Positions 1,061-7,000 of a stretch of 64,000 bases of DNA are shown piece by piece. The stretch covers positions 620,121-684,120 of the forward strand of contig NW_019217785.1 in NCBI RefSeq assembly GCF_002571385.2. The letters are read 5' to 3'. The notes beneath the pieces were generated by a model. The model was not told the origin of the DNA and did not search any database. It saw only the letters and a list, made by a program, of their open reading frames with translations. The translations under genes were made by a program, and so were the position numbers. How positions within the stretch are numbered: the first letter of the stretch is position 1; each line of letters opens with the position of its first letter. The DNA comes from Stylophora pistillata. Its lineage: Eukaryota.

Positions 1061-4000
1061 TCATCGGTAACAAACTTGTCCAATTTTGACGCCAAACTGT
1101 TCTTTTCCTACTGCGCGGTGAAAGAACGTCCAGTCTTCAATGGGGAGAACATCAACTTTGTTAGTTGCGAACTTAAACTCGGTTCTGCGCCACTTTCCAT
1201 CATCGCGCTGTTGTAAAATGATAAAAATACGTTATTACAAAAACAACTAGACATCATCTTGCTTGCTGTGCAACGTTTGATTTTTGCAATCAAAACAGCA
1301 CTGCATGATACTTGTCAGTACCTGGCAGTAGTCTCGTGTAACGTTTGGCCTTGGATTGCTTGTCGGTGTGAAGTCGAAGCCTCTCCTCCCATGAAAAATC
1401 CAGGAATAACGATGACTTTTTGAGGCTCTGTGGAACCATGGTACAATTCTCTTACACTTGACTGTTACTGTTTGGCTGACCGTGGTGCTAAGAAGTCGCA
1501 GGAAGTTAAGCTGTACTTTACTGACTCTGTAGCTGATCTAAAAATTGGGGGAAAGAAGGCTTCGATTTTAAGCTGGTGTTAATTAAAAATCATAGAATTT
1601 TACCAAGAAAATGCAAGAAGTCAATTGCACTTTTGCTTATCAGTGAACAGGATACATATTACCTTAAAACCTTGTTTAAGATTTGAAAATCTCTGCCACG
1701 ATGATTTTGAATCATTTTTCCAGGTCTTCTTCGGAATCTGTAGAATTTATAAAATTATAAAGGCTGATAGTTTCTAAAGAAACTGTTTGGGGCTGCGTTG
1801 GTGGGGGTAACGAAATAATTTGGTTATATCAACAAAGTTGAAATGGTAAATTGGCCATCGTAACGATTACAAAAGCTGACGTTTCGAGCGTTAGCCCTTC
1901 GTCGGAGCGAATAGAGGAATTGTGGGTTGTGTGTGCTTTTAAAGGCAGAAAATGGAGCTACGGTGGCCAATTTACCATTTCAACTTTGTTGATATATCCA
2001 AGTTATAAAATTATAGCTCGAGTTTCGGGAACATGATTAAAAAAAATATCATGACTCAAGGAAAACGTATACACAAGACCTGGTTGTGCTGTGATGCTAA
2101 CTAACATTCTTGTTGTAAGAAAACCAACATACCTTATCCTGAAGGGGAGAAACACAAGATTCCCCTCCCGCTGTAAACTTGCAGTAAACCTTAATGGCAT
2201 CAGCAGGGCATCCAAGGTTGGGATCAATCCAGAAATTACCTGTACCAGATATGGTTAACACTTTTACAATCGAACCTGTACTAGGTTGTCACCATCACAG
2301 GCAGAACGAGTGAGTGACCATCTAATGAAAGTTCCACAACATAGAGATCGAACTTAATAAAAATTCCTTGCTATGTGCCAACATTTATAACTGAAAGGAA
2401 GTGTGCTAAGCCTGACAAGGCGGTAGTCATGGCCTTGAAGTGCCTTGTCAGTATCTTTATCAAGAGGGTTACTTCACTAATTACAAATAAGCTAGAAATT
2501 AAAAAAAGAATATCATCTGCAATGTGGTGATGACGTTTTGACTAAAAATATTGGTTGGTTAAAAAAAAAGTACTTTAGAGAGGGATTCATGATTTCACTT
2601 CAATGTTTCTTGTTTGGTGACCGTTTAAAAGGGATTTAAACAATATCAACAAGCCTACAGGACGCAGTCAAAGGCGATCATGACCGTTTGTTAGAGATGA
2701 AAACTACATAATTCAAGAGGAAAAAGTTACCGACCGTTTAGTAGAGGGTGACCGTTTAAATACGGTACTGCCCAATTCAAGCTCGACTGTCTACGTCACG
2801 TAATGAGTTTTAAAAACATTTCGGAAACAATTTATCGACCACAAATAGAAACTCTTTACCCACCGTCTCGATAGCTGTCACTGTCCATAAGGTGTTTACA
2901 CGACATGGCTGGATTATCTCTGGTACCTAGAGGAAATTTGTATTTCTCCACCGTAGAAGACACGTATAACAAAGACTTGATGTTTCGTATTGCCTGAGAA
3001 GAAAGCAAACAATCATAGTCTGAGAAAAAGAGGAAAATAGCTCAAGAAACACTGAAACTGAGTTAAAGATCTGAAAAATGTATTTACATTCGGCGGAACT
3101 AAACTGTAAGTGGCAGTGACAAAGAATGTAAATATTTTCCTATTGGTATGTTAGCACGTGGGCCGCTATGGCATTAATTGAGTCTTATGTTGTTTAGCGT
3201 ATTTAACGTTTGATATTTGTAATGCATTCATCTCAGCTCTGAAACTTTTCTAGTTTTACGTTAAATTTTATCTTGCATGTAATTAAGCTGTTTTACCTCT
3301 AACCCCCAGAGGTTGGTGTGCCTGCATTTGGATGGGGAATACGTTCCCATTTTTCCCATTGGGTTTTTCGGGTTTGCGTATTAGGTGATGGCACAAAAAG
3401 GTTTTAGCCCGAGAGGTGATAACTGATTGTTTACTATTCTGTGTAACTTTGTCGGACGGCATTAAATACTCATCAGGCTCCTAGTTCGAGCTGGACACTT
3501 ACTCTTGTGTATGAGTCGTGAATTTAAATAGGAATTACCTGATCTAAGTCATCATGCTGGGAAAATCTTTGAAACCCCAGCGCCTGACCAGGGGGACCCT
3601 AGGGTGAAAAGTGTAAAAAAAAAAAAAAAAGGAGCAAGCAAGAGAATCGACTCAGTTTCTTACTGCAATCTCAATACCTCTTTGTAAATATTACATACGG
3701 TGAGGGGAAAAAAGAGACTGAAGGAAGGAGGAGGGAGGGGGGGGGCAGGGTTGATGGAGAAAGATTAATCTCAATCTAGCGAGGAGTCATATACGAAATG
3801 ACGAAATACGAGTTTCCAACTAATTTAAGCTACTTTCCATTCTCATCAATCAGATTAAATAAAAATCAAGAACTCACCGGTGGACCAAATTCGCCCTAAG
3901 GATGGATGAAAAATAGGAAAAAGTTACAGCTCGTATCTAGTCCTTTCAGAGCTTCCATAGTTGTACGTTGTAAGCATGAAACTGGTATCAGTGATGTTAT

Positions 4001-7000
4001 GATGTCTCACACGCAAAGGTCGAATGTACCGACAGAAAGTAACACAAAAGTAAATGGTCCATCGACGAATCGTATACGGCTCTCACTTATAACCAACCAA
4101 CTGATCTGCAGCTTCTGGGGACCAGCTGTTACAAGCATTTAATTACGCTTAAACGTTGACTAAATTACTGATGAAGATGTTTCCATTCCACATTCAAACT
4201 TAGATAAAACAGGCGGAACAATAAAGATTTTGTACAAACTAGGTATAGAGCCAAACGGCAATTTCCGTCTTGTAACATCTTGAGAGCAAAATGCTTAATA
4301 AGTATTCTTGTTTCTGACTGAGTTATTAAGGACGCCGCGACAACCTTTCGTACATTGACGAACGTTTCTAATATCATATTTTGTACACATTCACATGCGC
4401 AAATTTATTCTCCTAGATGAGTGTTGTGAACAAAAGCAACTACAAAAGCTTTTGAAGAGGCTTACACTTACCGTAATTCCTCCTACTCCCTAAGAAAGAA
4501 AAGAAAGCGCGATTAAGGTCTAAAGATCCATGTCATCAAATTAAAAAGTAGAAATACGCAAAGACATACCTTTAAACCTGGAGCTCCCTTGGAGATTCAA
4601 ACAAAAAAAAAAGAAAAAGGAAATATTTTAAACAAATACAGTTAAGGTGTTATTAAGTATTTTAGTTAACTGATAAAGGCTTACACAGCTTTCAAGTCTA
4701 ATGTCTTCTACGATCACGCTAAAAAAACAATTGAAATATTGTTGAGACCCATCACTAAATTAGCGAGAAAAGCTTACTCTCCAATAGGGAGAAGCATTTT
4801 CTATCAGTTGAAGAAGGACAATAAACATTTACAATAAAGAAGAAATTTCCTCACCGGAATGCCTTTTTCTCCCTGCGACAAAATAAACGCAAACAAAAAT
4901 GATCAAATAGAACATTGGTAAATTCAACTGAAGAAGGTGAATTCCTACAGAAGGAGAAACATGCCACGACTATGGGACGACCAAATGAATACTTATCAAT
5001 TAACATCTGACATACATTAACAAATCTCAACTGAGAATGACACTTACCACGTAACCAGTGAGACCCTACAAGCAAGAAAGCAAAGAAAAAGTGAATTATA
5101 TTTGTGAAGGAGTTGCAGCGCCTTAATTCGCACATATGTCGTCAACCTATGCAAAAAATGGTTTGACCTTAATCGTATAATGTAAGACTAGTCTGAAAAA
5201 AGACTGTTGTCGTTGACTTTAACTTCAATTCTACTTCCAGTGTCGGATGCTAACCGTATCCACAATTCATAATATACAGCAGTAAAAACAGGGTAAAAAA
5301 AATTCTTCGTATCAGAGACTTCATATCATGATGCGTCATCTTTTACCTGATTTCCTTCTGAGCCTGGGCTGCCTTGAAGACCAGACATTCCAGGATCCCC
5401 CTACAATTCACTGCAAATATTAGTTTCCTCACAGGGATATTTCTAATTCTAAAATCGTAGTGACAGAACTTAGGCTAAAATCACCGAAAATGCAGTTGAA
5501 AAAAAATTTAAACAAGCAGCAAATAATTAAAACAGTCAAGAGATACATGTTCACAAGTATAAATCTAGCCAATAATTGTAAATTTTACCGTTTGTCCTGC
5601 ATTGCCAACTCGACCGCGATCTCCAATGACACCAACAGAGCCCTGTCTTCCTTTCAGCCCAACTTCCCCTTTTTTTCCAGGAATACCTCTCTCGCCCTAT
5701 AAGAGCAAAGAAAAACATTCAAATCAAAGTCTGATGCACGGGTTAGTACTTTCAGCTATGTAAATATCAAAAGCTTACCCTCTCGCCCCACATTCCCGGG
5801 TCTCCTTGCGCACCCAGTTCCCCAAACAGTCCCTGTTAAAAAAGACGCATAGGATAGTAAACTGATTATATCGATATCCTCTTTATGGTATGTAATTTCC
5901 AGAATTTCTCACCCTAATGGTCAGTGGTGATAAAATATCTACCTCTGCACCTATCGTTCCCGTCTCTCCTATTGGTCCAAGCATTCCTTTTCTTCCCTTT
6001 GACAACAACAACAACAACAAAAAAAATAAACAAAACAAAGAAGAACGAAAAAGGAAACAACCTTTACGTGGGTAAGTAGTTCATATCTGTTGTAAGAAGT
6101 AGTTCAATCAACGTTTGTTCTTCCTGAAGATAGTTTTGCCTTAGTTTAAAACAACTAAAGGAAAATAAAATATTTAAAAATGAAAAAAGTGTAGTCAGGA
6201 GATGTCATGAGTTTTATGGAAATTGGTTGCCTCTGACTGTTGTTATTTCTGAAACAGACGCTTCGGCTAATGCTTAAGCCTTCAACAGTGATATGAAAAA
6301 ACGAGATCGTTATCATACGCTATTTAAAGTTAAAAACGTGACGCGAAGCTTGCGCGCGTAACTATGTATTTGATGCTCGCGCGAGGTCTTTATAGGCTTC
6401 TGGAAGTACGATGTGATCGTTCCCAGCATTCGGATCCAAAGTAGAGTGCCAGGCCTCAAGGAAAAGTCCCTCGTGGTAATAAGATTCGAAACCAACGACC
6501 CTGACGTTTGTAAAGTCCATGTTATGATCGAAAAGGTGGACATGGCTTGCGACTTTAAGTACTATGGCCAAACAGAAAGGTCATTAAAGACCAGAATTGC
6601 GGAGTACAAAAAGGCAGTTGCAGGTTTTGACTTAAACTCCAAAGTCGCAAGCCATGTCCACCTTTTCGACCATAACATGGACTTTACAAACGTCAGGGTC
6701 GTTGGTTTCGAATCTTATTACCACGAGGGACTTTTCCTTGAGGCCTGGCACTCTACTTTGGATCCGAATGCTGGGAACGATCACATCGTAGTTCCAGAAG
6801 CCTATACAGACCTCGCGCGAGCATCATATACTTAGTTACGCGCGCAAGCTTCGCGTCACGTTTTATAACTTTAAATAACGTATGATATCGATCTTCGTTT
6901 TTTCATATCACTGATGAAGGCTTAAGCATTAGCCAAAACGTCTGTTTCAGAAATAACAACAGTCAGAGGCAACCAATTTCCATAAAACTCAAGATAAAAT

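What the first reader, a model, noticed from the sequence alone, without database searches (positions are those of the whole stretch)
3878..5065. Five consecutive 18-nt microexons build the C-terminal end of the triple helix
Seen: 5065-5048 (GLTGYV), 4872-4855 (GEKGIP), 4587-4570 (GAPGLK), 4489-4472 (GVGGIT) and 3895-3878 (GEFGPP), each exactly two Gly-X-Y triplets, phase 0, with AG acceptors and strong GTRAG/GTATGT donors. Known: fibrillar collagen exons are normally 54/45 nt or multiples, and to my recollection only isolated 18-nt exons have been described. Inference: this is a microexon array at the helix nucleation end. Every exon is skippable in frame and in register, so it could tune helix length in 6-residue steps or record repeated intron gain splitting 54-nt exons into thirds. 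Gene predictors would miss it.
Basis: partly seen in the sequence, partly recalled or inferred. Interest (0 to 1): 0.78.

Follow-up and report, generated by a model that had tools for sequence, protein, structure and literature searches.

The report
Five tiny exons end coral collagen
A stony-coral collagen gene really does build the last stretch of its triple helix from five consecutive 18-base exons that are always spliced in. They are the extreme form of an old, widely shared habit of fibrillar collagen genes, not a device for adjusting helix length.

Summary
All five 18-nt exons sit at the stated minus-strand coordinates, each with two Gly-X-Y triplets in phase 0 and AG/GT borders. The pattern has 6 hits in the window against 0.01 expected.

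They are real and expressed. A public transcript contig maps as 54,108,54,18,18,18,18,18,60,131... RNA contigs from two studies and raw reads join every microexon to its neighbour. No skipping joint was listed, and eight orthologous coral protein sequences are gapless across the 30 residues. The idea that skipping tunes helix length is therefore not supported.

The gene is a C-clade-like fibrillar procollagen, probably of Stylophora pistillata.

The array is not unique:
- Twelve of 13 paralogues checked in this genome carry 18-nt exons at the helix end. Nine read 36-18-18-36(27), and two others carry runs of 18.
- A distant cnidarian orthologue has the same five.
- Xenia and amphioxus C-clade gene models have 18-36-18-27/18.
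- A fish XI-like gene has 36-54.
- Every intron position in the window array recurs in some other clade, which hints at an ancient origin.

The 18-nt exons have stronger splice signals than the 54-nt exons. NCBI models of three coral orthologues break off at or after the array.

This is a new variant of a known kind, of modest interest.

The parts
5347..5400 (-). Last ordinary 54-nt Gly-X-Y exon before the array
   Evidence: Scan. Transcript contig L046 positions 187-240 map here. The joint 5399>5588 to the 108-nt exon is seen in X6, X14 and X23.
5048..5065 (-). Microexon 1, 18 nt, two Gly-X-Y triplets, phase 0
   Evidence: L046 positions 241-258 map here. The loose end at 4873 in X6 reads into this exon, and the X23 joint 4588>5047 ends here.
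4855..4872 (-). Microexon 2, 18 nt
   Evidence: L046 positions 259-276 map here. The in-between letters of joint 4588>5047 in X23 are this exon.
4570..4587 (-). Microexon 3, 18 nt (GTATGT donor)
   Evidence: L046 positions 277-294 map here. The in-between letters of joint 4491>4854 are this exon in X6 (depth 370), X14 (depth 190) and 11 reads of X23.
4472..4489 (-). Microexon 4, 18 nt
   Evidence: L046 positions 295-312 map here. The in-between letters of joint 3896>4569 in X23 are this exon.
3878..3895 (-). Microexon 5, 18 nt
   Evidence: L046 positions 313-330 map here. It forms one side of the X23 joint 3896>4569.
3539..3598 (-). 60-nt junction exon: the last two helix triplets (18 nt) followed by the C-telopeptide
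   Evidence: L046 positions 331-390 map here. The joint 2992>3538 is seen in X6, X14 and X23.
2862..2992 (-). C-propeptide exon 1 (131 nt)
   Evidence: Pfam COLFI match, L046 mapping and joints.
2133..2237 (-). C-propeptide exon 2 (105 nt)
   Evidence: Pfam COLFI match, E 3e-13. L046 mapping. Joint 2237>2862.
1663..1737 (-). C-propeptide exon 3 (75 nt)
   Evidence: L046 mapping with AG/GT borders.
1322..1537 (-). C-propeptide exon 4 (216 nt). This exon was used as the search query.
   Evidence: Pfam COLFI match, E 2e-11. Sequence read. L046 mapping.
549..1207 (-). Last exon: end of the C-propeptide (stop codon at 1063-1061) and at least 512 nt of 3' UTR
   Evidence: Pfam COLFI match, sequence read and L046 mapping.
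5589..30067 (-). Upstream part of the major helix: about 50 exons, mostly 54 or 45 nt, plus one of 108 nt
   Evidence: Scans.

Best explanation
The five 18-nt pieces are constitutive coding microexons of a C-clade-like fibrillar procollagen gene on the minus strand. The coral is probably Stylophora pistillata. Together with the first 18 nt of the next exon, they encode the last 36 residues of the major triple helix, next to the C-telopeptide and the trimerising C-propeptide.

Shown: all five are joined in order into the mature mRNA. The array is conserved in a distant cnidarian orthologue.

Shown statistically: the 18-nt exons of this gene family carry stronger donor sites and more pyrimidine-rich acceptor regions than the 54-nt exons. 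The introns around them are short (80-576 nt here).

Inferred: those strong signals and short introns let the spliceosome recognise such short exons every time.

Inferred on origin: the array is the most finely divided version of an old layout. In that layout the last 108 nt of the helix-coding region is cut at multiples of 18 nt. Most paralogues and other phyla keep only a subset of these introns.
For: Exons and chance: (6 hits against 0.01 expected).

RNA:
- Joints, in-between letters and the 144-nt contig span in three RNA runs (X6, X14, X23) from three studies.
- Exact colinear mapping of public transcript contig L046.
- Its product P0001 is 100% identical to the query exon and reads straight through the array.

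Gene identity:
- COLFI matches on four exons.
- In the tree the gene groups with the Xenia gene, the amphioxus XXVII-like gene and vertebrate XXIV, with 98/96 support, apart from the A and B clades.

Conservation:
- L045, about 60% identical in the COLFI exons, has five 18-nt exons and then an 18+telopeptide exon.
- Porites lutea shows at least three.
- Eight orthologous coral protein sequences are gapless over the region.

Family context:
- Twelve of 13 paralogous loci carry 18-nt exons at the helix end. Nine of them read 36-18-18-36(27).
- One of them matches NCBI protein P0126 exon for exon.
- Amphioxus reads 18-36-18-18, Xenia 18-36-18-27 and a fish XI-like gene 36-54.

Splice signals:
- 56% of 32 18-nt exons have a full GTRAGT donor, against 28% of 165 exons of 45 nt or more (Fisher p 0.004).
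- Acceptor pyrimidine content is 0.80 against 0.70 (p 5e-7).
Against: - Read depth over the joints is low (3-11 raw reads each), and assembled contigs drop rare variants. Low-level or tissue-specific skipping is therefore not excluded.
- The 18-nt exons of the paralogues were called from sequence alone, except for the one gene that matches P0126.
- The argument for shared intron positions counts nucleotides back from the helix end. It assumes no triplet insertions or deletions, yet Xenia already needs one 9-nt shift.
- Intron lengths around 18-nt exons do not differ from those around 54-nt exons across the family. Short introns therefore cannot be the whole explanation.
- No N-propeptide domain was found upstream.
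Confidence: 0.85

Rival explanations
1. The microexons are cassette exons. Regulated skipping shortens the helix in 6-residue steps.
For: - Every exon is symmetrical, in frame and in triplet register, so any skip would keep the Gly-X-Y repeat.
- Partly spliced contigs that retain the 576-nt and 267-nt introns exist at about 3-7% of the mRNA depth. Splicing here is therefore not instantaneous.
Against: - No skipping joint reached the listing threshold in two poly(A) contig sets, one random-primed set and one raw-read run.
- The dominant contigs hold exactly 54 + 90 nt between the flanking exons.
- Eight protein sequences from at least three coral lineages have no 6-residue gaps.
- In vertebrate fibrillar collagens, in-frame exon skipping gives shortened chains with a dominant-negative effect (PMC9320522).
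Confidence: 0.06
2. The array is a recent, lineage-specific product of repeated intron gain. The gains cut two 54-nt exons of this one gene into thirds.
For: - Most fibrillar collagen exons are 54 nt or derived from it (PMC2852846).
- Only three of 14 genes in this genome carry runs of 18-nt exons.
- Gly-codon boundaries resemble proto-splice sites, so parallel gains at triplet borders are conceivable.
Against: - The same five exons occur in L045, which is only about 60% identical in the C-propeptide. Any gain would therefore be old.
- Counted from the helix end, the positions 18, 36, 54, 72 and 90 each recur elsewhere: in coral A-like paralogues (36, 54, 72), the amphioxus C-clade gene (18, 36, 54, 90) or the fish B-clade gene (18, 72).
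Confidence: 0.3
3. The five pieces are chance look-alikes in a long intron, and the true mRNA splices 5347 directly to 3598.
For: None found.
Against: - The chance expectation is 0.01.
- No 5347>3598 joint was seen.
- The transcript contigs contain all 90 nt.
Confidence: 0.01

Closest known systems
Ephydatia muelleri fibrillar collagen gene COLF1 / EmF1 (Exposito and Garrone 1990, PNAS 87:6669). Cited from my own recollection, because the paper is not held.
   Same: - As I recall, it is a fibrillar collagen gene with 54-nt-based exons, one 57-nt exon carrying a helix imperfection, and an 18-bp exon that marks the end of the triple helix.
- NCBI names the Orbicella orthologue of the window gene 'collagen EMF1-alpha-like'.
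   Different: One 18-bp exon was described there, against five in a row here. In the window gene the helix ends inside a junction exon, not at an exon border.
Chordate C-clade fibrillar collagens: vertebrate COL24A1/COL27A1 and the amphioxus XXVII-like gene
   Same: - The C-propeptide groups with them in the tree.
- The amphioxus NCBI model ends its helix with exons of 18, 36, 18 and 18 nt, then an 18+telopeptide exon. It shares four of the five internal intron positions of the window array; only the one at 72 nt is missing.
   Different: - Amphioxus keeps a 36-nt exon where the coral has two of 18.
- The only vertebrate locus obtained (snake XXIV, incomplete and scrambled) shows 36 + 27 nt, with the helix ending at an exon border.
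The other fibrillar collagen genes of the same coral genome (for example NCBI 'collagen alpha-2(I) chain-like', P0126)
   Same: Same family and same genome. The terminal 108 nt of the helix is likewise cut at multiples of 18 nt and includes two 18-nt exons.
   Different: Their pattern is 36-18-18-36, with an intron exactly at the helix end. The window gene has two extra introns and no intron at the helix end.
The 54-bp primordial exon model of fibrillar collagen genes (Yamada 1980; Exposito 1993; reviewed in PMC2852846)
   Same: Upstream of the array the gene follows the 54/45-nt rule closely.
   Different: The review describes 54, 45, 99, 108 and 162-bp exons and does not mention 18 or 36-bp exons. 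The terminal block seen here falls outside that description.
Alternatively spliced microexon arrays, such as the fast troponin T mini-exons and the Schistosoma micro-exon genes (own knowledge)
   Same: Runs of very short, symmetrical, in-frame exons.
   Different: Those arrays are combinatorially skipped to make protein variants. Here inclusion is complete within the detection limits.

Membership tests
Fibrillar (fibril-forming) procollagen | C-terminal COLFI / NC1 propeptide domain | tested here: met
   Pfam PF01410 matches four exons, jointly covering profile positions 8-233. Product P0001 carries PF01391 and PF01410.
Fibrillar (fibril-forming) procollagen | Long Gly-X-Y helix of about 1000 residues, encoded by exons of 54 nt and derivatives that start with a Gly codon | tested here: met
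   About 50 exons of 54, 45 or 108 nt lie between 30067 and 5347, then the array. My count gives roughly 930-950 helix residues. A few exons may have been missed, and one may be an assembly duplicate.
Fibrillar (fibril-forming) procollagen | N-propeptide (TSPN/LamG or VWC module) | tested here: inconclusive
   Ten open segments upstream (30-48 kb, minus strand) gave no Pfam match. Exons may be too short for this crude test, or may lie further upstream.
C clade (types XXIV/XXVII and invertebrate relatives) | C-propeptide groups with XXIV/XXVII and not with the A or B clades | tested here: met
   Maximum-likelihood tree of 23 C-propeptides. The window gene, its coral orthologues, the Xenia/P0006 gene and amphioxus XXVII-like plus vertebrate XXIV form one group, with 98/96 support for the split. 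Only midpoint rooting was used.
C clade (types XXIV/XXVII and invertebrate relatives) | Shortened helix with two imperfections | tested here: inconclusive
   A Gly-to-Ala start exon at 12207-12154 turned up, as did the 3' part of a longer exon near 13142-13118. I did not work through the imperfections, which are the subject of another note (s1-787395).
Alternatively spliced microexon cassette | Transcripts both with and without the exon | tested here: not met
   Only inclusion forms were seen in four runs, in transcript contig L046 and in eight orthologous proteins. Sensitivity reaches roughly 20% at best.
Constitutive microexon | Present in the dominant mRNA, with splice signals stronger than those of ordinary exons | tested here: met
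   for presence. for stronger donors and pyrimidine tracts (p 0.004 and 5e-7).

The most novel reading that the evidence does not exclude
The run of 18-nt exons is the ancestral state of the last 108 nt of the metazoan fibrillar collagen helix. The 36, 54 and junction exons seen there in other clades would then have arisen by differential intron loss. At this end of the gene, the primordial coding unit would have been two triplets (18 nt), not the classical 54 nt.
Probability: 0.3. Interest if true: 0.55.

Novelty: new variant of a known kind. Interest (0 to 1): 0.38.

Why it matters
The finding gives a clean, RNA-verified case of five consecutive constitutive 18-nt exons. That is a hard test for gene predictors and spliced aligners: NCBI models of three coral orthologues break off at or after the array.

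For collagen evolution, the helix end next to the C-propeptide turns out to have its own fine-grained exon layout. It is cut at multiples of 18 nt, and this is shared by the A-, B- and C-clade-like genes sampled here, from cnidarians to chordates. The classical 54-bp model, as reviewed, does not describe this.

The finding does not point to a new function.

Tried and rejected
- Literature: four full-text searches for 18-nt or microexon collagen exons found nothing relevant. The key primary papers are not held (Exposito 1990 and 2008). Prior description of the cnidarian pattern therefore cannot be excluded.
- Human sequences: none were used.
Exons were searched one by one by reference. Joined evidence comes only from public contig L046 and protein P0001.
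It was redone by deriving the peptides from the loci.
- Missing or thin cross-species loci:
  - The Acropora (P0045) and Lemmus XXIV (P0052) proteins were not on record.
  - The snake XXIV locus is scrambled and gap-ridden, so only its last two helix exons could be placed.
  - Contigs for P0002 and P0005 were too short to be useful.
  - The P0004 contig (L047) gave only one 18-nt exon.
- Porites lutea shows only three 18-nt exons in the 10 kb upstream, and no 54-nt exons. Its gene may be rearranged there.
- N-propeptide: the upstream Pfam scan was blank.
- Masked stretches: a masked stretch in L038 could hide a sixth 18-nt exon.
- A tree of the paralogues was dropped because the single 72-residue exon is too diverged, at 29-33% identity.
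Full report
**Observation**

Read on the minus strand, the region holds five open 18-nt pieces at 5065-5048, 4872-4855, 4587-4570, 4489-4472 and 3895-3878. Each is two Gly-X-Y triplets, preceded by a pyrimidine tract and AG, and followed by GTAAGT, GTGAGG, GTATGT, GTAAGT or GTGAGT.

A scan for AG + (Gly triplets)n + GT finds them in line with about 50 exons of 54, 45 or 108 nt running from 30067 down to 5347. It finds nothing on the plus strand, and nothing on the minus strand outside this gene. 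The stricter pattern with a GTRAG donor has six hits, all in the gene. Four are microexons and two are ends of longer exons. The expectation from shuffles is 0.01.

Downstream lie a 60-nt exon (3598-3539) and then exons that match the fibrillar collagen C-propeptide domain COLFI. The 60-nt exon holds the last two helix triplets and the telopeptide.

**Expression**

The run search found RNA libraries of a coral that hold the exonic part of the stretch. Two poly(A) contig sets, one random-primed set and one raw-read run were laid on 2000-5800:
- A 2832-nt contig of run X14 has pieces at 2133-2237, 2862-2992, 3538-3597 and 5588-5695. Exactly 144 contig letters lie between the last two pieces. That equals the 54-nt exon plus five times 18.
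- Joint 3896>4569 carries in-between letters equal to exon 4472-4489.
- Joint 4491>4854 carries letters equal to exon 4570-4587 (depths 370 and 190, and 11 raw reads).
- Joint 4588>5047 carries letters equal to exon 4855-4872.
- A loose end at 4873 reads into exon 5048-5065.
- No joint that omits a microexon was listed.
- In the raw-read library the strand bias fits a minus-strand mRNA.

Independently, the exon 1537-1322 was searched by reference against the representative protein library. It returned a 333-residue protein, P0001, that reads straight through all five microexon peptides. Its source is a 1576-nt assembled transcript contig (L046). That contig maps colinearly on the window as 54,108,54,18,18,18,18,18,60,131,105,75,216,659 nt, with GT-AG compatible borders.

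The exons are therefore real and belong to the dominant mRNA.

**Is inclusion variable?**

Two further coral orthologues known from transcripts (P0041 at 72% and P0042 at 67% identity) align without gaps across the 30 residues. So do the members of all three 90% clusters, eight sequences in all.

Contigs that retain the 576-nt or 267-nt intron exist at about 3-7% of the mRNA depth. They look like splicing intermediates.

Only 3-11 raw reads cover each joint, so isoforms below roughly 20% cannot be excluded. Nothing supports tuning of helix length. In vertebrate fibrillar collagens, in-frame exon loss gives a dominant-negative effect (PMC9320522).

**What gene, what organism**

A tree of 23 C-propeptides places the window gene and its coral orthologues in one group with three others: an octocoral (Xenia) gene, the amphioxus 'alpha-1(XXVII)-like' protein and vertebrate type XXIV. 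The split from A-clade and B-clade sequences has 98/96 support.

The genome is very probably Stylophora pistillata. The NCBI protein P0126 of that species lies on a contig of 1,313,253 bases, the exact length of G000 contig C23. It also matches ten consecutive exons of a C23 locus without a mismatch.

**The array in context**

A COLFI search of the whole assembly found about 13 further fibrillar collagen genes, eight of them clustered on C23. I fetched the 10 kb upstream of each C-propeptide (8.7 kb at C106, whose contig ends there) and scanned it:
- Nine genes end the helix with 54, 36, 18, 18, 36 (once 27).
- One (L037) shows 36, 36, 36, with much masked sequence.
- Two (contigs C191 and C29) show runs of five and four 18-nt exons, like the window gene.
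- One locus (C106) ran off its contig.

Eighteen-nt exons are therefore a family-wide feature of the helix end in this coral. NCBI's own model P0126 includes them.

**Other species**
- A 20-kb contig of an ENA metagenome assembly (L045) carries an orthologue with 53-62% identity to every scleractinian orthologue, so it is probably a more distant cnidarian. It has five 18-nt exons separated by introns of only 76-237 nt, then an exon with two triplets plus telopeptide. This is exactly the window layout.
- Porites lutea shows at least three of the exons.
- The Xenia model reads 108, 18, 36, 18, 27, then 18+telopeptide.
- The amphioxus model reads 117, 18, 36, 18, 18, then 18+telopeptide.
- A char XI-like (B-clade) gene reads 54, 36, 54, then 18+telopeptide.
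- An incomplete snake XXIV locus shows 36, 27, then telopeptide.

Intron positions, counted back from the helix end:

| Gene | Positions (nt from helix end) |
|---|---|
| Window gene | 18, 36, 54, 72, 90, 108 |
| Coral A-like paralogues | 0, 36, 54, 72, 108 |
| Amphioxus | 18, 36, 54, 90, 108 |
| Char | 18, 72, 108 |

Every position of the window array therefore recurs in another clade or phylum. I read this as favouring old introns with differential loss, but only moderately. The count assumes no triplet indels, and Xenia already needs one 9-nt shift. Parallel gain at Gly-codon borders is also possible.

**How such short exons are used every time**

I compared 32 exons of 18 nt with 165 exons of 45 nt or more, across 13 genes of this genome:
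- The 18-nt exons have a full GTRAGT donor in 56% of cases, against 28% (Fisher p 0.004).
- Their acceptor pyrimidine content is 0.80 against 0.70 (p 5e-7).
- Flanking intron lengths do not differ across the family. In the window they are short: 281, 175, 267, 80, 576 and 279 nt.

The stronger signals are shown. That they are what secures inclusion is inference, based on general knowledge of microexon splicing.

**Annotation**

- NCBI models of the Orbicella (P0160), Acropora (P0045) and Porites (P0044) orthologues start inside or after the array, with spurious or missing upstream sequence.
- The Xenia gene is split into three models.
- The models for P0126, Xenia and amphioxus nevertheless do contain 18-nt exons.

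**Comparison with the literature**

The review of the family describes 54, 45, 99, 108 and 162-bp exons only (PMC2852846).

From my own recollection, the sponge COLF1 gene was reported with a single 18-bp exon at the helix end. That paper and the 2008 sea anemone/demosponge paper are not held. Four full-text searches found no description of 18-nt arrays. I cannot rule out that published exon diagrams already show the cnidarian pattern.

**Limits and rules followed**
Exons were searched singly, by reference.
- Masked or N stretches were left unread.
- No human sequence was touched.

**Verdict**

This is a real, expressed, conserved and constitutive microexon array. It is the extreme variant of an old exon layout of fibrillar collagen genes. 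It is a useful benchmark for annotation and of some value for collagen gene evolution. There is no sign that it acts as a length-tuning device.

Noticed in passing
window 20041-20285 and 20748-20992: A 245-nt direct repeat at 96% identity, 707 nt apart. Each copy holds an identical 54-nt helix exon (20181-20128 and 20888-20835). The second copy starts right after the single N at 20747, so this is either an assembly duplication or a very recent exon duplication.
   Followed up: partly
window 3016-3535 (intron between exons 3539 and 2992): RNA reads lie in the orientation opposite to the collagen mRNA. They carry many base differences, a 'goes back' joint 3532>3076 and many loose ends. This looks like a transcribed repeat family or a foreign look-alike, not part of the collagen transcript.
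   Followed up: no
window 3879-4491 and 4486-4873: Poly(A) RNA contigs retain the 576-nt and 267-nt introns of the array at about 3-7% of the spliced depth. They are probably splicing intermediates.
   Followed up: no
window 25844-25888 (minus): A 45-nt helix exon appears to use a GC donor (GCAAGT).
   Followed up: no
G000 contig C23, about 631-1135 kb: At least eight fibrillar collagen genes are clustered on one contig. Seven of the eight end the helix with 36-18-18-36; the eighth (L037) shows 36-36-36 beside much masked sequence.
   Followed up: partly
Proteins P0160 (Orbicella), P0045 (Acropora), P0044 (Porites); locus L052 (Xenia): Public NCBI models of the orthologues are truncated at or after the microexon array. 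The Xenia collagen gene is split into three separate models.
   Followed up: partly
L045 4998-12213: In the distant cnidarian contig, a second COLFI-bearing gene lies tail to tail with the orthologue. Retrotransposon reading frames follow it.
   Followed up: no
L051 (Porites lutea) 2878-5053 and 18578-21426: Two identical-length TENA/THI-4-like gene calls flank the truncated collagen model, and no 54-nt helix exons lie within 10 kb upstream. This suggests a local rearrangement or a very long intron.
   Followed up: no
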